A DNA stretch of 64,000 bases, taken from the NCBI GenBank assembly GCA_900088475.1, contig FLMG01000261.1, positions 124,001 through 188,000 of the forward strand. The letters are read 5' to 3'. The translations under genes and the position numbers were made by a program. The notes under the pieces were generated by a model. It did not search any database and was not told where the DNA came from. It saw only the letters and a program-made list of their open reading frames with translations. Below, piece after piece: positions 19,981-32,800 of the stretch. Each line of letters starts with the position of its first letter. The first letter of the stretch is position 1. The stretch is from Hyphochytrium catenoides. Taxonomy: Eukaryota; Protista; Hyphochytriomycota.

Positions 19981-20427
19981 CCTCCGATATCATCAAATCG
20001 GCGAAGGTTAAGCTTTCTAGCTAATAGCGTTCTCGCATTATGCTGTTGGATGCGACGTAGGCTCTCCTTGGAGATGTGACGGAGGGAAGCAAACCGAGGG
20101 AGTAACTCCACTGCCTAGCGCCATGCGCAGCAAGCGAGAATGCCCAGCTGGACAACACTCAGGATGAGAATCAGGGTTCACTCTTGAAGGGATGAAACAT
20201 CTCCTGTCGCATAAAAGAATTTTACTTAGCTCCTTGCGTCAGGTCTATCATCCAACTTCGAGGACGTCGGATGAGACAGGCTCTGCACTTCATTACTAAC
20301 AAGACCGATTGGTCATGTCAGAGTCAACCTGACAAAGTACGGGCCAGGAAGAGTGTAATGTCAGCAAGGGGTAATTGCGGGATCAGAGAGAGAGGGACTG
20401 ACAAGAAAGAGGGAATGTGTGCGAGAG

Positions 20428-20433
<6 letters not shown>

Positions 20434-20468
<35 letters not shown>
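20434..20468. repeat. (AG)n microsatellite in intergenic region
   Basis: Perfect AG dinucleotide run followed by a degenerate purine-rich tract. Confidence 0.95.
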
Positions 20469-20471
<3 letters not shown>

Positions 20472-21192
20472 AGAGTTAGACGGAGAGAGAGATAGGGAGA
20501 GCGAGAGAGAGGGAATGAAGAAAGAGAGAGGTTGTCAAGAAGGAACTGCAGATCCAGCGGGAGCTAACGAGGGACTGGAGGAGGAGGAGTTGGAGGCCAG
20601 AAGTTCTAAAGACCGTTACATTTCAGGCAACTACTGAACATCTTCATGAGAGCCCTTTCCCGCGACTGATAACTACTAAGTCCCAGCGTCATCAGTCCTA
20701 AAATCGCTTGTTTAGTTATCACCCGCTGACGATGCCATCAAAGAATGATGGGCGTTACGATGATGTTCCCTCTCCTCTCGCTGCTCCTCCTCTGAAGAAA
20801 GCTTCTTTTTGACAACTTGTTCCGTGCCGGTCTCTCCTTGTGGCGGACGTCTCTTCCCCTCTCCTGCATTGTTTGTCAATCCTCTTGCCACTCTCATACC
20901 CTTTCATTGCCTTGGTCTCCTACTGCAGCAACCCGGGAGCTCACCCTTGAGTTATCCTCTCCTTGCTCCTTGTACTTAGCTCCAGAGATACCTAGCGACG
21001 GCGAGAGCTTGATGCAGTTGGTTTTGGGGAAGCAATCCCGAAGCCATGCCTTGTGATAATGAGCACAAGGCCGCCGCTCTGACCACATTAGAGATGAGGA
21101 CCTTATCTAGAGATCCTCTCTCTAACCGACGTTCCACAGAAGCTGAGCACAGATGATGGAGGAGAGAGAGGGATAAGCATAGTGCGGGGGAA

Positions 21193-24100
21193 ATGAGTGA
21201 TCTTAGGCTTGAGGAGGTCATCCTCCTTGAGACTATGAACACTCAGATGAAGGAGGAGTCGGAACAGGTGAAGATTAACGGCCTGCTCACTGCAGCCGGA
21301 AACCCAGACTTTGATTTCCTCCTTCGAACAGCTCCACACCGTCGCCGCCCTCTCTTCCCGGATGTCCCCAGTAAAAGGAGCAAGCCATCAAGACAGAGCC
21401 CGTCCAAAGGTCTGCGAGGTAAGGGAAGACCGGGGATCTTGGAGGGAGCAGTCGGCATCATCTTCTAAGAATTCGGGCACTTCTGGGCTGATGTCGCCCT
21501 TTACTCTAAAACATGAAGTTGCCAAATCTTACCCTTGAATTAAAGAGCTTTTCCTTTGATATATTCTTTCAACCTCATGCACCTCATCTCTGGCTCCTAT
21601 CGGTCCGTCCGTATATTCGTCTCTGTTCAAGACAGCTCAGCACTATCCAACATATTGAACTCTTGCTATCCAGGAAATCAACAAAAGGCACCGGAAGAAG
21701 AAGAAGACGAACGCTTTTGCTTCCCTTCCATCCCCAAGCGCGCGCGGGGTCCAAGCGGTGATATATTAGAGCGAGAAGCAAAGAAGAGAGATGGATCCCG
21801 ACTAAATGAGTTCAAAGGAAGAGGACGGAAATGTATGGACACACACTATTGTTATCTCATTCTCTGAACCTAAATGCCCTTGCCACAGCGTCATCTCTGA
21901 GAGGAGTGGAAGGGACAGGCCGAGAGAATAGATCGTCCTTCCCTTTTGGCACTTCCCCCGCAATTACCTTTACCAAGGCGGGGACTGGGCGTTTGCCATG
22001 TTCACCTGGAGACGAAACAGGTGACGAAACTTTGTCGTTACGTACCTTTACTCCTTTTGCGACGGGTTCCCCATGCCTTACTCGCCCATCTTCCCATTAA
22101 CTTTCTGCTGTAGTGGACCCAGACCTTATTCCAGAACTTGAGGGAGTCGTCCTCACTTCCATCCAGCCTGGAATCTACAAGATCACAAGTCAAAAGACCC
22201 GGCTAGCTCATTTCGGTCAGCTTGCTCCTATTACCCGGCGCCCTCCCTCTTCTCTTCTCTCTAACCGCAGTTGACTGTCTTTCCTCGGATATCTCTGCTC
22301 CCTTGCACTCTCGTATCAGGAATAACTTGGAACATCGAAACCTGTGCTTCTGAGATCAGGAGATCGTTGGCAGAAGGAACTCATCCGCATCAGAGGCTTA
22401 TGGCGGAAGTCGAGAGGGAGGGTCTTCATTCAATAGTGATAGAAGTTATACAGGTTTACTTAGCGTGGGACTTCATCAAGTCCACTACGAACTCCTTACT
22501 CCTCTTAGTCCTATATGGTCCTTCTTTTTTCTCCTTGTCTCCGTGGCTAATCACTCTTCTTTCATCCTTTGTGGGCATTACCTTTCTACTCGTCACCCAG
22601 CTTCCGTTGCAGAGGTATTACCCAGTTACGTCGTTCGCCTTCGTCATTAAGACACCAGTGCTCTTGTTGCTTTCAGGCCGTTAGAGTCCCGTTCAACTTT
22701 GACTTCAGACAAACAGAAACATTGCTTCAGCGAAAGCTCTCACAGTTCCAGTATCAGCATGCTCTTAAGTTGTTTGTTTGTGTCAATTCGGTCTATAAGA
22801 GGAATAAAACCAAGGTGACTGACGTTCGTTCGCATTTGCCCATCAATATCCTGAACCTTTGATTTGCCTGACGGATTGATGGTCTCGTGGTTGCTTCTTG
22901 GCTTACTTCAAGCCTGTTCACTACGCCACTAGCAATTTTACATCTGAAATAGTTTTGCGATTTACCACCCTCTTGGTCTCCCTTGAGTCTTATATATTCC
23001 ATAAGGCTCTCTGACCTGTTACCTGATGACATCCCCTCTCAGCCTGCGTTGTCTTCCTGGAGGACCAGAGTGCATTATCAAAAAGAAGCAGAGTTAGATG
23101 CTGCAGTAATCCACATCCAGGTGCCCCCAAGCCCAAGAATTTTACACACGACGCCCTCTCGTGTTCGGATTATCAATCTTTCTAATGTTCGCTCTTCCTC
23201 TTTGGTGACTGTTTAAGACAATCTTCCATGATTTGTAGGTTTATCATCTTGCGTCTCTATTCCGTCGCGTATTGATCTAGACACCATTGACTACGTCTTC
23301 TGTGGCCATGTCTTCATTGCTTTCAGTGTGAAGATGTTTGTATAGCTCGTAGACTCTACTGTATCTGCCTAATCTTGGACTGAAATGGATCGCGTGTTGT
23401 GGCAGTCCTTCTGGCGAGGTATAATTCATTCTCGCTTGGCGAGGGAAAGAAAGAAAGAATGGGCGGTCCGTCTCATCCAGAGGTTCTTTAGAGGTTATCG
23501 AACGCGCTGCTTTTACAACGAAGTCAGAGGATGGACTAAACGCATCCGCGCTGCCACTCATATACAGAGGGTCTACAGAGGCTTTTTAGATAGACGATTA
23601 GGTAAACTGTAACCCAGCTTTTGTGGGACGATCCGTCGTCGTCTTCATCGCTATGCTCATTGTCTCACGTTGTAGAAGCCGCTTTGTCCCTCTTTATCAT
23701 CGACCTACATAGCTAACAGTTTTCGTGCCTATCTGTCTTGCATCTCTCTCCACGCCTCGTCTTATATACCTCCTGCGATTCCAGTGCGACCACCATGTCG
23801 CCTCGGCCTTCATCCCATCTTGTTTATCATCTCCTCCACCAAAGCGTTTTGGTTGATTGCTTGCCCTGCTGAGTTTCCCTTTGTACCCTAGCCACCAGGT
23901 TCCGTCGATATTATACCCACAGAAAGGCTGCCATCACTATTCAAAGCGTCGGAAGAGGCTTCTTAGTGAGGTGGAGAAGGAAGAGACATCAAGAATCTGT
24001 GAAGAAGGAAGCGGCGGCTCTGGAAATTGGGAGGATCTGGAGAGGCCACAGAGCTAGGTCTTTTGTGAAGAATATCAGACGGCTTGAGGGAAGAAAGGTC

Positions 24101-27100
24101 AGAAAGAAAGGGACCTGGAAATGCTTGAATGAACACCCGACGTAGGACGCGTTTGATGCCCCAGCCAGGAAGAAATTTCCCATATCTCTGTTCCCTATAC
24201 AGAACTTAAGATCTTGACCAATCCTACTATTGCAATGTGGACTTCCATCTGCTCTGAAAATCATGCACTTCTTTGTGATCTCCTTTACCCTCATCCTCAG
24301 GCATTCTTATTCCTTCCTTTGCTCTTTCATCACCTTTCTTCAAAGTGTCATTATTACGCGACTTCCCCTGGCTCAATTATAACGTCTGTCCTCTGGTCCT
24401 CTTTCTCCACTGTCCCGCCTCCAGTTGATGGTTCTCGCTGCTGCCCGCTGCATATGGAAGAATTATAAGATCTATAGAAGCAAGCGGTTCTTGTCAGTGA
24501 TCTACATGGCGCTGGCGCTAAGAGGAAGAGTTAGAATGATTTGGCACTGGTGGAGGAGGCGGAAAGGAGTCAAGGCTCTGGAAGATAGAATAAGGAAAAG
24601 GAGGGAAGAGAGAGAAAAGGAGAAGATAGTACTCTTCTTCCGCTCTCTTCTCTGCAGAAAAGTTATAGGAAAACTGCGGAAGCGAAAGAAAGAAGGCAGT
24701 GCTGCACGTAGAATACAAGCACTATATAGAGGACAGCAAGGCAGAAAGCTCTTCGCGGTATTGAGGGAAGAAGAGGAAGGCAGAAGAAGAGAACGGGAGA
24801 GAGAAGATTCTGCAGTTTTTATCCAAAGGCGATGGAGAGGTAAGGTGCAAAGTGATCCTCTGTCCCACAAAGAAAGGAGAGGAAAGTAATGAGATGAATT
24901 TCGATAAGTATCAACTGTTAGGAGCATTGTGAGGATAGGGGCAATCAGATTAGAGATTTTTTTGAGAGCATTCCTCTGAAAGCAAAGGGAGGGAGACGAA
25001 AGAAATGCGATGGAATTAGAATTGGGCAAATGCTGCACCTTTACTTATCCCCTTTCTCTTTCAACCTGCTGTGTCCCTTTCCTGCTCAACCCTAGCATGG
25101 CGGCAAGGGCGGGCAAGCCGGGCTCTATATCGGGCGCTCAGAGAGAGAAAGATGGCCACACGCATTCAGCGACTTTACGTCTCCAGAAAGCGTAGAAGAG
25201 TCGGCAGACTCTTCCTCGAGGAAAGGAAGAGACAGAAAGCCGCGACAAACATACAAAGGATTATAAGGGGTAGACGAGGGAGGAATAAGGCTCTTCTAGT
25301 GCGTGTGATGCGAAAGAATAGAAGAAGATGCGAAGAGTGCAAGGAAGCGGCTTCCTCTCTCTATTCTCGCTCTTTTGAATTAGAGCTTTGCGATTCATGC
25401 TATGAGAAGCTCCTGCTCCTTACGAAGGAAGCTGACCCGTACTTTCCTCTAGAGAATGAGCCTGTCCCACTCCAGGACTTTGAGCGGTACAGCTTCAATC
25501 TCAGTACTCTTTCCTGCCACTTTCACGTTTAATCTTCTTTTACCTCTTATCCTATGGTTAAGTGTTTCCTGTCTTGTTTCGCCACCATGATGTCTCATCT
25601 CCCCTATTTTGCGGAGGGGGTCTGACTTGAAGTCCCTCGACACAAGCTTCTTCTCCCTGATGTTGAGGGTTGTGCCTTCAGTACAATCTAATGCTGGTCC
25701 CGGATTGTCCTTGCTGCCTTTTAGTTTAACACAATGAGTTGTTGACTGTGTGAGTCACTCGAACGCTTTCCCCCTTGTCCACAGCTTTGTTTGTTCTATT
25801 CGGCCCCTTCAGCGTCGATACCATCAACATCAGCAGCTACTCCTGTCCGAATTTGGAAGCTGCCATGACTGCAGTAGGGCTGGCAAGCTATGGTGCAGTG
25901 ACAACTCAACTGTCAACTCTATCACCCTTCTCTTTGTTTGTCCACTTGGTCCTTCTGCTATCCGGCTATTTTACCTCGTCTTTTATCTGTGTTTTCGGAT
26001 ACTTCCGACAACTGAGAATCTGTCACTCCTCACTTGGCGATCACGAGCGGTATCTAATATTTCGCTCATCACCTCTAGGTGCTTTACCTGTGGATGTCAA
26101 TATTGTCTCTGTTGCCACTCGAGACTTCACGAGGAAAAAGCTTTTCGTTCGCACTCTTCTCAGAAACTGCCCTTATATCGCAGAAGCTGTAAGGCGGCCA
26201 CTGTCATTCAGAAGCGGTGAGCGATATTGCCTCTTCGCCTATAGACTCAGCTTGCCTGAGCTTCGGTTCGCTTAGTATGGTTGTACTCACGTTTGTCTGG
26301 ACATTTTGACAACTTTTTTATTCAATTGAGGGAGTTGCTGTCAGCCCTCCAAGAACATCTCTAATGGACATGGACCTTCATCTTTACGTTGTTCTCTTTA
26401 TGTTCCTACAAATTTCCTCAGTCGTTACAGAGCTCTTCACTCTGTTGATCTCTCTTCCATCCCGGTCGATGCTCTATTGCCATCGCCCACTTTCTTACTG
26501 CTCAACCTCCTGCTCAACCTCCTCCTAGTGTACGTGGATTTCTTTGTCGGAAGCACCTGTGGCAGACAAGGGTATTACGGCGAAACCTTGCCGCGACTGC
26601 AATTCAGCGAGCCGTTCGAGGAAAATTGGCTCGCGTTCTCTTGGAGCGCATGAAGAGCGAGTACCCTGTCTCTGCTAACGTGATCCAGAGGGCCTATCGG
26701 GCATATAGAACGAAGACTCTCATGAAGAGAAGAAAACAAAAGGAGAAAGAAAACAAAGCCGCAATCACCATTCAAAAAGTATCTGACTTTAACAACTGGA
26801 AGGCAACTGTCTCAATTGATCTCCTTCTCCCTCTCTTCATATCATCTAGCTCCCGAACCCTTGTGCTTGATCGTCCCTGCATCGTCTGCCTTGTACCGAC
26901 CCTACCTCAACTCTCACTAAGTCACGATTTTCTGCTGCAGCACCCTCATTGTTTGGCTTCTTGCCATCCACTACTCATTCTCACCACTGTCTGTCATGAT
27001 TTGCGTTGGCTCGTATCAATGGTCAAATTCATTACAATGCTTGCTGACCTACTCTGCTGCGGCCTCAGATATGGCGGGCTTACTGTTCCCGAGGGTTATA

Positions 27101-29381
27101 TGGTCGCCTGCTTCGACGACGACAGGAGGAGGCCGCTGTGTCGATACAGAAGATCTGGAGAGGACATCAAGCGAGGTCAAGAGTGACGAGGATACGTCAC
27201 AAGAAAAAGAAGAGACAAGACGCTGCACTAAGAATACAACGAGGATACAGGCTCTATCATTGGAAGGTAAGGGCGGCTTTCAGGTCCTTTCTCCTTGCGC
27301 CTATAGATTAACCCTTTCCGCCTTCCCGATGTGCCTCTATTTGATCCTACACTAGAACGAAAGAGCGAGAGCAGCATTCGTTATCCAAAAAGGCTATCGC
27401 AGGCACCTAGAAGAAAAGAGATCCTTAAGGGAGGCCATGAGACAAATGCAAGAGGAGGAAAGAAGGCAGCGAGAAGCGGAAATGAAAGAGCTAATGCAAA
27501 TGAAGGAAGAAGAAAAGACCCAGAGGGATACGGAATGGAAACGTGCAAAATTGGTAGCGGAGCTACGCAAGAAGCTTATGCGCTCTTTAGGTTTGTCGTT
27601 TGTGCAGGAAGGTTTCGCCCGCATATTCTCCCTCCTCTCTGCGAAATTGGAGAGGGAGAAGCAGAAGCAGAGAGAAAAAGCCGCCATCTCTATACAAGCG
27701 ACAATCCGCATGTTTGTCAACTGCAGGCGATACCATAAGGCTGTCGCTGCGGCGGTTACCATTCAAGCTGGAGTAAGAGGAATGATAGCTCGGAGGAGGG
27801 TGAAGGAGATTTCCAGGACTAAGAAGAAGGACAAGGTCANNNNNNNNNNNNNNNNNNNNNNNNNNNNNNNNNNNNNNNNNNNNNNNNNNNNNNNNNNNNN
27901 NNNNNNNNNNNNNNNNNNNNNNNNTCTATCTCTTGGATCCTGGACTTGTGGATTTCTTCTTATACCCTCTCTTCGGTGTCATTGCAGCCTGGTGGCTATC
28001 GCGTCAGCGTGAGACAGAAGAGAAGAGAGGAGAAAGAGCAGTACAAGAAAAACCAAGCTGCAAAGAAGATCCAGGCAGTGTTCCGTCGGTACTCCGCCAA
28101 GAAAGCTTATAAAGAACGTATCCGGAAGAAGCAGACAGGGTCATCAGGAAATCTCAGCGCTCCATCTCCATCTGCCGGGGATGCAAAGCAAGGCGAGGGG
28201 GCTAAAGATGACGAGGAGGAGCTCGTAGATCCAACCTCAAGAGTGGCCTCTGCTCTGATGAGCTCCTTCTCAAATATCAAGGACGATGCAGAGGAAGAAA
28301 GTAGACGACGAGCTGCTGTCTTGAAGGAGTATGAGGCTAGCCTTCAAAGCCCGACGGACGGAACGTCCAATACAGAATGGGAACAAACAGACGGAGAGAG
28401 AGCGTACTCTGAAGTGTTGCAGGCTTGGCAGCAGTACTATGACGAAAACGCTGGCGGTTATTACTACTATAATTCACTTACAGGTGAAGCGCGATGGGAG
28501 CCACCTCAGGAGCTCGTAGCAGCTCAGCAGCAGCAGCGAGAGTTGGAATTGCAGTGGGAACAGGTCCTCCTCTTTCCCTACTTCTGCATTGGCGTCATGG
28601 CGCCATTCAGACTTCGTCTGCCTATTGCCCCGGTGTATCCCTCTCGAGCCTGTCACTATTGGCTATCTGATTCTTAGATTTGTCAGGTCTATCTAGTTGT
28701 GATTGTATTGCTCCCAAAGCTTTCCATTTTCGTCCTTTCAGCCCTTTCTCTCAGCTGCCTAGATGTCTCTCTTTTTGCCTTCGGCTGCTACTTGCGGTAG
28801 ATAATCAACTCCATACTGCTCCTGCCAGATCAACCGAAGCTGGCAGCAATTGTGGGACGAAGCGAATCAAGCTTACTACTTCTATAACCCCTATACACAG
28901 CAGACGGCCTGGCAGCTGCCTGAAGGTACTTGAGTGACGACCGAATTTGCTAGATGGGGTGTAGAGAGGTGTAACGAGAGCCAGAACAAAGGATCGTGCA
29001 CCTTCGGGGAAGTCCGTCTCCCTAGAGATAGGAGATCGGTTGGGGATAAGACGGTTAGACTCTAAGACATTCGCCGATCAGATCTCTCATAGGCCAATTG
29101 AGCCGACTATCCTCCCTCTCCATGTTTCTTGCATGGAAGGGGCATTGACCTCCATTTATTTCTTTTTTGTCCCCATAACTGACGCTGAAGTTTATTCGTC
29201 AGGCTGCCAGCTTCACGAAGACTACTACACGTCAGGAGGTATTGGTGAAGGGGATCAAGCTGCCCTAGATGGCCACAGTTCACCATCCTATTATGGTCAA
29301 GCAGCAGCAGTCTCAGGGCTGTACAATGAGTACGATTATTACGCGAATCAAGGGAGTCTCTTGTCCCAGCAACCCACTTAA
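21193..29381 (+). CDS. Large IQ-motif-rich protein with a degenerate GIY-YIG-like domain, B-box-type zinc fingers and two WW domains
   Basis: 5' exons 21193-21418, 21674-21832, 22114-22215, 22320-22453 and 22677-~22750 join in phase. About 20 IQ or IQ-like motifs follow (IQSFWRG, IQRFFRG, IQRVYRG, IQALYRG, IQRRWRG, IQRIIRG, IQRAVRG, IQKIWRG, IQAGVRG...). B-box-like CEEC...LCDSC (~25329-25400) and CHDCSRAGKLWCFTCGCQYCLCCHSRLH...H (25861-26155). WW domains WQQYYDENAGGYYYYNSLTGEARWEPP and WQQLWDEANQAYYFYNPYTQQTAWQLP. Interrupted by an N gap. The junction around 22750-23075 and the final exon are approximate. Confidence 0.82.
27840..27924. other. Assembly gap (N run)
   Basis: Run of n characters inside the IQ/WW gene. 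Confidence 0.99.
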
Positions 29382-29882: not shown

Positions 29883-32800
29883 TTAGGAGTACTGTTGGTT
29901 TATCATTGTCTTGAGGCCTTCTACTTGTGCCCGTAGCATGGCGTTCTCATCATGTACGCCTAACAGGGGCTGCCAGAGTGAGAAGGTCGAGAAAGTAGGT
30001 CAGCCATCCATTTGCAGGTAAACGGTCACCCTGTTCGTCAAAAGGGAGTATTTGAGCAGCTTTTGTATCGTAACTGTCGACATACGAGAGAGGAAGCCTG
30101 TGGGGAAGCTGCGTACCTTGTATTGCTCCTGAATAGCTCTTACTCTGCTTTCATAAGTGGCTTCAACCTTTGAAGAAAGCCCGAGTGTCAAACACATTGA
30201 GAGAAGTGACGGTGAAGGTAGCTGCGACTCAGCCTATTGCAATTACCGTGGCAAGCTGCTGCTTAAGATATTGAAGCTGGTGCTCCGCTCCCCGAACCTG
30301 TGCCTTCATCTGATCCACAAGCTTGTCTCGAGCATTCAACTATGGCACGACCAAATAACAGTAAGCAACACGATAGGACTGTAAGAAGGGGAGGGGACTG
30401 CAAAAAAGGGAGAGAACCGTAAATAAATAAGCAAGAGTGGCATCGACCTAAGAAGGCGAAAGGGTCTCTTAATTGGCCACTGCCAGTGAACAAGAAGCCA
30501 GGGATACAGGTCAGTATGGCATGAAGACGATGTGTGGGTCTCTGACATAGCCACTGATATATCTGACCTCCTGCTGCAGCCTGTAGGCAGCATTTACATG
30601 GATTTGAGCCCTATTATTTTCCTCCTCTAGGACCTTGATGCGGCTTTCAGACTACGGAAGAGGCAAGCAAGGTCAATAGCATGAAGGTGAAGGAGGATGT
30701 CGAATAGAACAAGAGGTACACAAAGGAGGAGAGCGCCTATGAACCGTGGGACCACCACAATTGAATTCTCCGCTAAGCGCTCATTCAAACGAAGTTCACG
30801 AAAGAAACAACATTCGACGACAATCTGACCAAACCCTGCTCATCTGTTGACATACTTCCTGCAACTTCAACTGGAGTTCTTGGGAGTCTTCGCTAGTGCG
30901 CTGCGGCAAAACAAATCCAAGGCTTATAAGTCAGACGCCATAGTACAGAAGGAAGAGAGGAAGACTGTGTTGTGATAGCAATGTTGAGACTTACATGGCC
31001 GTTCTGAGGCCCTTGCTCCGCCTCGGCCTCCTTTTGTTTCAGGAGTAGTTCATCCCTTTCTTTCTGAACAGAAAGAAGGGTCTGTTGCATATCGCCAACT
31101 TGCTTGGCCTGTCGTGCCAACTGCAGAATTATCGCACTTTTAGTGAAACCGGTCGTAAGCGATGACCTATTACCAGCCATGGCAAGCTGATGAAAGGAAA
31201 GCGCGGATTCTGACGGACCTTAATACGGAAGGTAGATGCGACAGGAAGGTATGTCGGATATAGCAAAAAGTCAACCAAATGCCGTCAAAGTCGAAGGAGC
31301 GTCCAAAGATGGGTCTCACCTCCTCTGCCANNNNNNNNNNNNNNNNNNNNNNNNNNNNNNNNNNNNNNNNNNNNNNNNNNNNNNNNCACTTCTGACCTCA
31401 AACATGACACTTGCTCTTGACCTGCCTTCTGTATCTGGATGTAAGGCGGTGTAATAGTGAGAAAAATAACAACAAAGGGATGAAACAGATGTGCGCTAGA
31501 GGAGGACAGTTGCGTGGCAAGCGAACATGGAGAGGAGTTTTGAAAAAGCTTATCAACAGTGAAGCTAAGAAAGATGAAAAGTTTAACACCTTCGACTACC
31601 TTTTCGAGCGCTATGTCCCGGGCTACCTGGCTTTCCCTTAGTTGCTCCTCAAGTTGCCCTATTGTTCTTTCTTGCTCCTCTGCTTTGATCTGAAGTTCTT
31701 CTATCATTTGGGAAGCCACTGGCAGAGGACTTATCAGCAATTTCTCTAAAGAGAGGACTTTGACATGGGCAATGGGGCCCATACGGAAGGAATAAGCTAA
31801 GTACCACCACAAACAGGCGAAATAAGCTAACCCAAAGGACCTGGAGGTCAGAAGATGTCGTTCCCAGCTTCCCGGAGTTGACCCCTTAATGATCATCCTA
31901 CGTACCACCTACTGCTCCCACAACAGCCGATGCCGCCGACTCATCCGATACCGGAGAGAGGGTTTCTGCACCTTGCGTAGAAAGCAGTGCTTTTAGCTCT
32001 TTTATAGCCTCCTCTTTCTGAGCCAGCTCTTCGTGCCTATCAGCCAAGTTGGTGTCGGCAGCCTCTAGCTGCTCTTTCAGGACTTCCACTTCCATAGCCA
32101 GAGAGGCAATTCGCTCTTTGGCTCTCTCTGCCTGTTCAACTTTCTCTTCCAAGGGTGCTTGGGCGTTTGTCTACGGATCATCGGTTAAGACAAGGACTAG
32201 AAATTGCTGGAGACTTGCCGGCCAAAATGGCTAATGAAAACATACAGTTTAAAAAGGCACAAGAGCGTGAGAGTAGCAATAAACAAGGCTAGAGCAGAGC
32301 AGTTATGCCAGAAATAAAGGAAGGCTTGGAGGCAGAGCAATTCTGTCAAGAGTTTATGGCAGCCTTGTGCCCACCTTCTCCTCAAGGATTCTCTTCAAAG
32401 TAGTAACACTAGCCTGTAGCTCGCCAAGAGTATTCTCCCTTTCTCGTAGCTGACTTTCTCTTTCTTCAATTTCCTTCAACAATGTCCCCGCTCTTTCCTC
32501 CGCTTCTACCAATGGGACAACATGCCAGTCAGGGGAGGAAAGCGCGCGTAACGTTGGGTAGACTAGTATCAGCGCAAAGTATGATGGGACTAGGGAGATC
32601 CCAGGGGGCGACCAACCTAGCATTCGCCGTTCCATCAGAGCGATCCTACGTTCTGCTTCACTACGGACAGTTGCATGCTCCACCTGGTACTTATGCACGG
32701 CGCTTCGAAGACCTGGACGAGGGTGCAGGCAGTCGTCAAATCATCATGGTGGCGCTTCGAAAGCTGGAGCTACAGCATACCGGGCAGCTCCGCTTCCTGC

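What the first reader, a model, noticed from the sequence alone, without database searches (positions are those of the whole stretch)
22114..22750. Domesticated, probably inactive GIY-YIG homing-endonuclease-like domain inside an IQ/B-box/WW scaffold gene
Seen in sequence: three exons (22114-22215, 22320-22453, 22677-~22750) splice in phase through GT-AG introns to give PGIYKITSQKTRLAHFGITWNIETCASEIRRSLAEGTHPHQRLMAEVEREGLHSIVIEVIQAVRVPFNFDFRQTETLL. The GIY half is absent from the ORF track. Established knowledge (sequence recalled from memory): the I-TevI catalytic domain reads GIYQIKNTLNNKVYVGSAKDFEKRWKRHFKDLEKGCHSSIKLQRSFNKHG. It aligns without gaps over about 50 aa, sharing GIY.I, the second-motif G, E, L..G.H, L and G. 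The YIG tyrosine is H, catalytic Arg27 is C and His31 is I. Inference: a mobile-element or viral nuclease module was captured, gained spliceosomal introns, lost catalysis, and now sits upstream of about 20 calmodulin-binding IQ motifs, B-boxes and WW domains. It could be a Ca2+/calmodulin-regulated nucleic-acid-binding or scaffolding module. I do not know this architecture from any described protein.
Basis: partly seen in the sequence, partly recalled or inferred. Interest (0 to 1): 0.82.

Follow-up and report, generated by a model that had tools for sequence, protein, structure and literature searches.

The report
Dead homing-endonuclease domain heading calmodulin-binding scaffold
The first part of a large calmodulin-binding scaffold gene encodes a real but almost certainly inactive copy of a DNA-cutting domain typical of selfish phage genes; water moulds (oomycetes) keep the same unannotated domain under strong selection.

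Summary
Exons 22114-22215, 22320-22453 and 22677-22814 join in phase through GT-AG introns to give the reported peptide.

A search of 1.84 billion proteins found two kinds of match (E 1e-5 to 7e-4). One kind is IQ/WW proteins of oomycetes with the same N-terminal domain. The other is genuine GIY-YIG nucleases.

- **Homology.** A profile of 19 family members hits the I-TevI catalytic domain (E 2.6e-8; hhalign 98.4%).
- **Fold.** AlphaFold gives pLDDT 91.9 and a beta-beta-alpha-alpha-beta-alpha fold. I-TevI is the best solved match (Z 10.6, rmsd 2.3 A).
- **Splicing.** Both introns sit at the same position and phase in Saprolegnia and Aphanomyces.
- **One gene.** Phytophthora encodes domain, IQ and WW parts in one uninterrupted ORF.
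- **Catalytic residues.** The Arg27 position is never Arg (Ala in 18 of 19, Cys here) and His31 is never kept. The GIY Tyr is invariant, and a Glu that probably matches Glu75 is kept in 18 of 19.
- **Selection.** Domain dN/dS is about 0.07, lower than the rest of the protein.

So this is an old, domesticated, probably nuclease-dead I-TevI-type domain. Its present function is unknown. I found no annotation or paper describing it. The scan noted this same stretch once before.

The parts
21831..22020 (+). Candidate upstream coding exon, possibly with the start codon at 21831. Its donor GTGACG at 22021 leaves 1 nt that completes a GTG codon with the first 2 nt of exon 1.
   Evidence: Open frame and phase fit. 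Inferred only; there is no transcript or homology support.
22114..22215 (+). Exon 1 of the domain: linker, beta1 (GIY) and beta2 (HFG, in place of YIG).
   Evidence: Sequence. It aligns without gaps to the orthologues. The secondary structure comes from the AF2 model.
22216..22319 (+). Intron 1 (104 nt, GT-AG, phase 1 inside the Gly codon of the invariant FG|xTW motif).
   Evidence: Saprolegnia diclina, S. parasitica, Aphanomyces astaci and A. euteiches have an intron at the same position and phase.
22320..22453 (+). Exon 2: alpha1 (holds the Arg27->Cys and His31->Ile positions), alpha2 (L..G.H motif) and beta3.
   Evidence: tblastn of orthologue P0001 maps to 22319-22456.
22454..22676 (+). 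Intron 2 (223 nt, GT-AG, phase 0 after Gln).
   Evidence: The four Saprolegniales genes have an intron at the same position and phase.
22677..22814 (+). Exon 3: beta3-alpha3 loop and the long helix alpha3, with the near-invariant Glu (probable Glu75 equivalent) and an invariant Leu.
23043..24097 (+). Exons 4-6 (23043-23120, 23406-23601, 23892-24097) with the first IQ motifs. One IQ motif spans the exon 4/5 junction (IHIQ|SFWRG).
   Evidence: Sequence and phases. Pfam IQ E 4.6e-9 and 7.1e-7.
24425..25486 (+). IQ-rich exons (approximate limits 24425-24885 and 25142-25486), including Cys cluster 1 at 25329-25400 (CxxC...CxxC, B-box-like).
   Evidence: tblastn of P0002 and P0003 maps to 25119-25403.
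25861..26154 (+). Cys/His cluster 2 (B-box-like), split by an intron (25861-25896 and 26080-26154).
   Evidence: Pfam gave no hit here. The orthologous region of P0001 gets zf-B_box at E 6.8e-4, below the cut-off.
26529..28110 (+). Further IQ-rich exons (approximate limits), interrupted by an assembly gap of 85 N at 27840-27924.
   Evidence: Pfam IQ E 1.9e-10, 1.9e-5 and 2e-10. 11 strict IQxxxRxxxxR motifs were counted in all.
28426..28506 (+). WW domain 1.
   Evidence: Pfam WW E 2.7e-8; coordinates; tblastn of P0001 and P0017.
28841..28921 (+). WW domain 2.
   Evidence: Pfam WW E 3.8e-7; coordinates.

Best explanation
These three exons encode the N-terminal globular domain of a large multi-exon protein. 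That protein continues into an array of calmodulin-binding IQ motifs, two Cys/His clusters, more IQ motifs and two WW domains. The domain is a true homologue of the I-TevI-type GIY-YIG nuclease domain, the catalytic module of phage and organellar homing endonucleases. It was captured once, before this organism and the oomycetes diverged, and it acquired two spliceosomal introns that are still shared. Every member has lost the catalytic Arg27 (Ala, or Cys here) and His31. The second Tyr is variable (His here). So it most likely no longer cuts DNA. It is nevertheless kept under stronger purifying selection than the rest of the protein. I therefore read it as an exapted, non-catalytic 'head' at one end of a calmodulin-decorated scaffold, acting as a binding or structural module, with the WW domains at the other end recruiting proline-rich partners. 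Shown: homology, fold, gene linkage, intron conservation, residue losses and selection. Inferred: loss of nuclease activity, the binding role, and the calmodulin dependence.
For: The peptile alone finds orthologues and true GIY-YIG proteins at E 1e-5 to 7e-4 among 1.84 billion proteins. The family profile A1 hits I-TevI 1LN0/1MK0 at E 2.6e-8 and 4.4e-7 and nothing else significant. hhalign against canonical GIY-YIG gives 98.4%, E 6e-15. The AF2 model has pLDDT 91.9 with b1-b2-a1-a2-b3-a3 topology. Foldseek's top hits are I-TevI (TM 0.72-0.74). VIA-align gives Z 10.6, rmsd 2.3 A over 83 residues, against 6.8 or less for other GIY-YIG enzymes. 44 viral GIY-YIG or intron endonucleases match at E<=1e-3. 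Gene linkage: the domain, IQ, Cys and WW parts lie in the same order in the window and in one uninterrupted ORF in P. nicotianae and P. capsici. Introns 1 and 2 have identical position and phase in four Saprolegniales genes. Residue table: Tyr6 19/19; Arg27 never Arg (A18, C1); His31 never His; Glu75-equivalent 18/19. Domain dN/dS is 0.066 and 0.074, against 0.28 and 0.13 for the rest of the protein. The 19 family domains form one clade (100/98). R27A is the standard catalytically dead variant of GIY-YIG homing endonucleases (PMC3664794; 1LN0 carries Ala at position 27, as printed).
Against: There is no transcript evidence for this genome. Pfam, NCBIfam and PHROGs do not recognise the window peptide, and Pfam GIY-YIG is only sub-threshold in 7 of 19 members. 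The window copy sits on a very long branch and departs from 7 of the 11 nearly invariant family positions, so constraint in this lineage could be relaxed. The invariant GIY Tyr and the near-invariant Glu might mean that some chemistry or metal binding is retained. The Glu75 mapping differs between alignment methods. The core is about neutral in charge, so the ligand class is open. Nothing here tests calmodulin binding or any activity.
Confidence: 0.8

Rival explanations
1. The domain is still an enzyme. It would be a GIY-YIG-derived nuclease or phosphoesterase with a re-wired active site that uses the invariant Tyr, the invariant His (I-TevI His40 position), the family-specific Thr-Gly-His loop and the near-invariant Glu, possibly controlled by Ca2+/calmodulin on the neighbouring IQ array.
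For: Tyr6 is kept in 19/19, His40 in 19/19 and the Glu75-equivalent in 18/19. Purifying selection is very strong. There are family-specific near-invariant residues: TGH, TWDL.
Against: Arg27 is absent in all 19 and replaced by a small Ala, and His31 is absent. The Arg is essential in studied GIY-YIG enzymes (PMC3664794). The window copy also lacks the Gly-His of the TGH loop.
Confidence: 0.08
2. In this particular lineage the domain is decaying. The family domain is functional in oomycetes, but the window copy, though still an open spliced frame, evolves under relaxed constraint.
For: The terminal branch is very long (5.17). Identity to the orthologues is only 20-30%. The window copy is the outlier at 7 of 11 nearly invariant positions.
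Against: The frame is open, both conserved introns keep GT-AG and phase, all 9 invariant residues are kept, and there are no indels in the core. The divergence may simply reflect phylogenetic distance. The next most divergent copy is a metagenomic relative.
Confidence: 0.1
3. The three exons are not part of the IQ/WW gene in this organism but belong to a separate upstream gene or are skipped.
For: No transcript data are available. The exon 3 to exon 4 junction rests only on phase and splice signals.
Against: All oomycete orthologues have the same order of parts in one protein, and Phytophthora has it in one uninterrupted ORF. Phases are consistent across six exons.
Confidence: 0.03
4. The likeness to GIY-YIG is chance, and the peptide is something else, for example a RecA/RAD51-like fragment.
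For: The best PDB hit of the single peptide was RAD51, E 0.4. No Pfam hit was found.
Against: The RAD51 hit disappears with the family profile, which hits only I-TevI significantly. The fold searches agree. The IQ motifs begin one exon after exon 3, leaving no room for a RecA core.
Confidence: 0.01

Closest known systems
I-TevI-type GIY-YIG homing endonuclease catalytic domain (phage T4 I-TevI, PDB 1MK0/1LN0; I-BmoI; Seg proteins)
   Same: It has the same fold and secondary-structure order. It shares the GIY motif, the Gly of YIG, the L..G.H motif between alpha1 and alpha2, the G before beta3, and probably the Glu on alpha3. I-TevI is the best sequence-profile and structural match.
   Different: Arg27, His31 and Asn90 are absent, and Tyr17 is His here. 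There is no NUMOD or helix-turn-helix DNA-binding tail. The domain is not in a mobile intron and not free-standing. It lies inside a conserved nuclear gene, is interrupted by spliceosomal introns, and is followed by IQ, Cys-cluster and WW modules.
Eukaryotic nuclear GIY-YIG proteins: SLX1 (GIY-YIG + RING) and ANKLE1/LEM-3 (ankyrin + LEM + GIY-YIG)
   Same: These are also GIY-YIG domains built into eukaryotic nuclear multi-domain proteins. SLX1 also lacks the C-terminal Asn (PMC1564403).
   Different: They are active nucleases that keep the catalytic Arg. They are much weaker structural matches (Slx1 Z 4.0). Their partner domains are different. None of the families listed in the 2006 superfamily survey has IQ or WW partners.
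ASPM/Asp-type IQ-array proteins
   Same: Both have a long array of IQ calmodulin-binding motifs. One source names the P. citrophthora orthologue 'Abnormal spindle-like microcephaly-associated'.
   Different: Pfam found no calponin-homology domain in the orthologues. The head is a GIY-YIG-derived domain, and there are WW domains at the C-terminal end.

Membership tests
GIY-YIG nuclease superfamily (Pfam PF01541 / I-TevI-type) | Three-stranded sheet with flanking helices in the order b1-b2-a1-a2-b3-a3 | tested here: met
   The AF2 model (pLDDT 91.9) has this order. I-TevI is the top match: TM 0.72-0.74; Z 10.6, rmsd 2.3 A, 83 residues.
GIY-YIG nuclease superfamily (Pfam PF01541 / I-TevI-type) | Significant sequence or profile relationship to known members | tested here: met
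   The family profile hits I-TevI at E 2.6e-8. hhalign gives 98.4%. The single peptide reaches Pfam-positive GIY-YIG proteins at E 1e-4 to 7e-4. The Pfam gathering score itself is not reached.
GIY-YIG nuclease superfamily (Pfam PF01541 / I-TevI-type) | GIY motif with its Tyr (I-TevI Tyr6) | tested here: met
   GIY is present in the window, and the Tyr is invariant in 19/19.
GIY-YIG nuclease superfamily (Pfam PF01541 / I-TevI-type) | YIG motif with its Tyr (I-TevI Tyr17) | tested here: not met
   The window has HFG. Across the family the position is Y8/F8/H3, and the Gly is kept in 18/19.
GIY-YIG nuclease superfamily (Pfam PF01541 / I-TevI-type) | Catalytic Arg on alpha1 (I-TevI Arg27) | tested here: not met
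   It is Cys in the window and Ala in the other 18; it is never Arg.
GIY-YIG nuclease superfamily (Pfam PF01541 / I-TevI-type) | His/Tyr four residues after the Arg (I-TevI His31) | tested here: not met
   It is Ile in the window and N/S/A/C elsewhere; it is never His or Tyr.
GIY-YIG nuclease superfamily (Pfam PF01541 / I-TevI-type) | Metal-binding Glu on alpha3 (I-TevI Glu75) | tested here: inconclusive
   A Glu kept in 18/19 lies three residues before an invariant Leu, the same spacing as Glu75-Trp78. A global hhalign pairs it with the catalytic Glu. HMMER's local alignment places it differently. No coordinates were available for a residue-level superposition.
GIY-YIG nuclease superfamily (Pfam PF01541 / I-TevI-type) | C-terminal Asn (I-TevI Asn90) | tested here: not met
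   There is no conserved Asn after alpha3, and the helix simply continues. The SLX1 family also lacks it (PMC1564403).
GIY-YIG nuclease superfamily (Pfam PF01541 / I-TevI-type) | Metal-dependent nuclease activity | not testable with these tools
   This needs biochemistry.
GIY-YIG homing endonuclease (mobile element) | C-terminal NUMOD/HTH DNA-binding region, and a location in a mobile intron or as a free-standing selfish gene | tested here: not met
   No NUMOD or I-TevI DNA-binding hits were found in the orthologues, in contrast to the phage enzyme. The gene is conserved, with orthologous introns, and is under purifying selection.
ASPM-like IQ-array proteins | N-terminal calponin-homology domains plus an IQ array | tested here: not met
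   The IQ array is present. No CH domain appears in Pfam scans of four orthologues.

The most novel reading that the evidence does not exclude
The GIY-YIG-derived head is not inert. It would be a Ca2+/calmodulin-gated enzyme or phosphate/nucleic-acid sensor with a re-wired active site (invariant Tyr, invariant His, near-invariant Glu, small Ala where Arg was). That would make this family a new class of calmodulin-controlled nucleic-acid-processing machine in oomycetes and their relatives.
Probability: 0.08. Interest if true: 0.85.

Novelty: new variant of a known kind. Interest (0 to 1): 0.62.

Why it matters
Homing-endonuclease nuclease domains are seldom found domesticated in eukaryotic nuclear genes. 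The eukaryotic nuclear GIY-YIG proteins I compared with (SLX1, ANKLE1/LEM-3) are active nucleases. Here an I-TevI-type domain lost its catalytic Arg long ago, gained introns, and has since been kept under tighter constraint than the rest of a calmodulin-binding IQ/WW scaffold.

That gives a datable case of a selfish-element nuclease turned into a non-catalytic module. It also gives a first annotation for the most conserved part of a protein family present in major plant and animal pathogens (Phytophthora, Aphanomyces, Saprolegnia). It points to concrete experiments on what the head binds. Finally, Pfam's GIY-YIG model only reaches this family below threshold, so similar domesticated copies may be hidden elsewhere.

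Tried and rejected
- **RNA evidence.** The look-up of sequencing runs listed no run, so read laying could not be used.
- **Family libraries on the spliced peptide.** Pfam, NCBIfam and PHROGs gave nothing useful. The separate exons also gave nothing.
- **Word search with the 124-aa peptide.** No hit, because the relatives are 900-1700 aa and outside the length window.
- **Single-sequence AlphaFold.** The model was poor (pLDDT 48.7) and was not used.
- **RAD51/RecA lead.** It came from the single-peptide PDB search (E 0.4). I rejected it after the family profile, the fold searches and the gene model.
- **My own dynamic-programming gene finder.** It mis-joined short exons, truncated exons 1 and 3, and missed the second WW exon. 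I used it only for approximate downstream limits.
- **ESM Atlas fold search.** It failed twice because the machine did not answer. The Atlas feature search gave only GIY-YIG phage clusters at score 0.78, which is a lead and not evidence.
- **Papers on six orthologue locus tags.** None found.
- **Aphanomyces pair for dN/dS.** dS was saturated, so no ratio could be given.
- **Donor lineage.** Not resolved. The nearest canonical relative I checked sits on a phage- or prokaryote-like contig.
Full report
**1. The observation**

Reading 21800-23100 shows the three exons exactly as described.
- Exon 1 (22114-22215) follows a CT-rich tract ending in AG and ends ...CAT TTC G|GTCAGC.
- Exon 2 (22320-22453) starts after ...GTATCAG| and ends ...ATA CAG|GTTTAC.
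- Exon 3 starts at 22677 after ...GCTTTCAG|.

The Gly codon of 'HFG' is split g|ga (phase 1). The second junction is phase 0.

Three further exons continue in consistent phase: 23043-23120, 23406-23601 and 23892-24097. One IQ motif is formed across the exon 4/5 junction. Pfam confirms IQ motifs in many downstream open segments and two WW domains at 28426-28506 and 28841-28921. I counted 11 strict IQ motifs, and more if degenerate and junction-spanning ones are included. The 'B-boxes' are conserved Cys/His clusters at 25329-25400 and 25861-26154. Pfam does not call them in the window and calls one only below threshold in an orthologue.

**2. First tests were negative or misleading**

- The separate exons and the spliced 124-residue peptide got no hit in Pfam, NCBIfam or PHROGs.
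- A single-sequence AlphaFold model was poor.
- The word-indexed protein search found nothing in its length window.
- phmmer against PDB sequences put RAD51 on top at E 0.4. I kept that as a rival lead.
- tblastn against 50,697 phage records returned only one kind of hit, an Acinetobacter-phage I-TevI-like GIY-YIG endonuclease. That hit was not significant at database level (E 5). It was in register from its first residue: 65 residues, no gap, 25% identity.

**3. The decisive search**

phmmer of the peptide against 1.84 billion cluster representatives gave ten hits at E<=1e-3.
- Five are proteins or fragments with the same N-terminal domain. The four long ones carry IQ motifs, and two of them also WW domains; one has a weak B-box.
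- Three are Pfam-positive GIY-YIG proteins (PF01541 E 8e-20, 3e-8 and 7e-14).

Two region-restricted word searches named the relatives. They are Lagenidium giganteum, seven Phytophthora species, five Aphanomyces species, two Saprolegnia species and Achlya. All are annotated 'hypothetical protein', 'WW domain-containing protein' or, once, 'Abnormal spindle-like microcephaly-associated'. Their precomputed Pfam lists show IQ and WW, with SPX or GCK in two proteins, and never GIY-YIG. Three further members come from a JGI metagenome, ENA and a Logan assembly.

**4. Homology and fold**

I aligned the window peptide with 18 orthologous domains (A1). There are no gaps in the core. Nine columns are invariant.
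- As a profile, A1 hits only the I-TevI catalytic domain significantly among all PDB sequences: 1LN0 at E 2.6e-8 and 1MK0 at E 4.4e-7. RAD51 is gone.
- hhalign against six canonical GIY-YIG domains gives 98.4% probability, E 6e-15, over beta1 to beta3.
- Scanned one by one, 7 of the 19 members touch Pfam GIY-YIG below threshold (best E 0.0029), and no other family recurs. This explains why the domain is not annotated.
- AlphaFold2 with A1 gives pLDDT 91.9 and the order b1(12-18) b2(24-29) a1(32-45) a2(51-60) b3(65-72) a3(81-116).
- Foldseek against PDB ranks I-TevI first (TM 0.72-0.74, rmsd 2.1-2.6 A) and UvrC's GIY-YIG domain next.
- VIA-align gives Z 10.6 and 10.1 for I-TevI, against 6.8 or less for other GIY-YIG enzymes.
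- Against predicted viral structures, 44 matches at E<=1e-3 are almost all GIY-YIG or intron-associated endonucleases of phages and giant viruses.

The domain is therefore a GIY-YIG domain of the I-TevI (homing-endonuclease) type.

**5. One gene, and old introns**

- tblastn of the orthologues onto the window places the domain, IQ, Cys-cluster and WW parts in the same order.
- In P. nicotianae and P. capsici the whole protein, domain included, is one uninterrupted ORF. There the fusion does not depend on any splice prediction.
- In Saprolegnia diclina, S. parasitica, Aphanomyces astaci and A. euteiches, two introns interrupt the domain. They lie at exactly the window's positions and phases: phase 1 in the Gly of FG|xTW, and phase 0 after the Gln that ends beta3.
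- The invariant FG-x-TW motif exists in the window only after splicing.

This is strong comparative support for both junctions. It also shows that the introns were present before these lineages split. Phytophthora has since lost them. In a tree the 19 domains form one clade apart from the canonical enzymes (100/98). The window copy is on a very long branch and pairs weakly with the metagenomic member.

**6. Catalytic residues**

The residue counts are, using the ungapped alignment to I-TevI-type enzymes.

| I-TevI position | Window | Whole family (19) |
|---|---|---|
| Tyr6 (GIY) | Tyr | Tyr 19/19 |
| Tyr17 (YIG) | His | Tyr 8, Phe 8, His 3 |
| Arg27 | Cys | Ala 18, Cys 1; never Arg |
| His31 | Ile | Asn/Ser/Ala/Cys/Ile; never His |
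| His40 | His | His 19/19 |
| Glu75 (probable) | Glu | Glu 18/19 |
| Asn90 | absent | no conserved Asn |

- The near-invariant Glu on alpha3 lies three residues before an invariant Leu, the same spacing as Glu75-Trp78. A global hhalign pairs it with the catalytic Glu. HMMER's local alignment differs, so I call this mapping probable, not shown.
- No conserved Asn corresponds to Asn90; the helix continues instead.
- R27A is the standard catalytically inactive form of these enzymes (PMC3664794), and the 1LN0 sequence itself carries Ala at position 27.

Loss of nuclease activity is thus a well-founded inference, but it is not an assay.

**7. Selection**

The ratios below were computed on codons taken from the orthologues' own DNA.

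| Pair | Domain dN/dS | Rest of protein | dS over the domain |
|---|---|---|---|
| S. diclina / S. parasitica | 0.066 | 0.28 | 0.48 |
| P. nicotianae / P. capsici | 0.074 | 0.13 | 1.56 (near saturation) |

In the Aphanomyces pair dS is saturated, but amino-acid identity is 0.67 in the domain against 0.44 elsewhere. The domain is the best-kept part of the protein, so it is not a decaying relic in oomycetes. For the window's own lineage I cannot say. Its copy is the outlier at 7 of the 11 nearly invariant positions, which may reflect distance or relaxed constraint.

**8. How it most likely works**

I commit to this reading. The domain is a non-catalytic head derived from a homing-endonuclease nuclease domain. 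It sits at the N-terminal end of an IQ array that binds calmodulin or related light chains. Two zinc-binding Cys/His clusters lie mid-way, and two WW domains at the far end recruit proline-rich partners.
- What the head binds is open. The GIY-YIG domain by itself binds DNA only weakly (PMC3664794).
- The family core is about neutral in charge, unlike the basic canonical domains. A protein or small phosphate ligand is therefore as likely as nucleic acid.
- The Phytophthora members carry a KRRR-rich insert in the b3-a3 loop, which hints at nuclear import.
- The retained Tyr, His and Glu leave a small chance (about 0.08) of re-wired chemistry.

**9. Novelty**

The 2006 survey of the superfamily lists SLX1 (RING), COG3680/ANKLE1 (ankyrin-LEM), Penelope, a MutS fusion and a few unorthodox homing endonucleases as the eukaryotic families. 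None has IQ or WW partners (PMC1564403). No paper in the library holds both 'GIY-YIG' and 'IQ motif'. None mentions six orthologue locus tags. Papers with 'GIY-YIG' and 'oomycete' mostly concern mitochondrial introns or mobile elements, and none of those listed concerns such a protein. The proteins themselves are public but unannotated for this domain. I rate this a new variant of a known kind: a new, inactivated, intron-bearing eukaryotic GIY-YIG family with a new architecture. The scan had already noted this same stretch once, from an overlapping window.

**10. Limits**

- There are no transcripts for this organism.
- The 5' end is uncertain. A candidate first exon at 21831-22020 fits the phase.
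- Downstream exon limits are approximate, and an 85-N gap lies inside the gene.
- No donor was identified.
- No biochemistry was possible.

Noticed in passing
window 27840-27924 and 31331-31386: There are two runs of N (85 and 56 bases). The first lies inside the IQ-rich part of this gene, so any full-length model of the protein has a hole there.
   Followed up: partly
P0017, P0019-P0024 (Phytophthora orthologues), loop between beta3 and alpha3 of the domain: All Phytophthora members carry a Pro/Ser-rich then KRRR-rich insert of 30-35 residues. It is absent from Saprolegniales, Lagenidium and the window. It looks like a nuclear localisation signal.
   Followed up: no
P0012 (Aphanomyces invadans H310_10932): The annotated protein lacks about ten residues (the STWDL..NA.S stretch) exactly at the conserved intron-1 position. 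The public gene model probably uses a wrong acceptor.
   Followed up: no
P0024 (P. infestans, 1534 aa) against L006/L007: The P. infestans model carries a GCK domain (PF07802) in front. In P. nicotianae and P. capsici a GCK-domain gene is the separate upstream neighbour. This is probably a merged gene model, or else a real fusion.
   Followed up: no
P0001 (Lagenidium giganteum, 1700 aa), residues about 1400-1600: This orthologue ends in an SPX domain (Pfam E 1e-12) that is absent from the others. It is either a lineage-specific fusion or a merged model.
   Followed up: no
P0006 and P0010: The nearest canonical GIY-YIG relatives each hold two tandem GIY-YIG domains in one protein. P0006 sits on a contig of small, densely packed ORFs next to a NACHT protein.
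   Followed up: partly
window 20419-20637: Upstream of the gene there is an open frame rich in (Arg-Glu)n repeats. My crude gene finder wrongly pulled it into the model. Its status is unknown.
   Followed up: no
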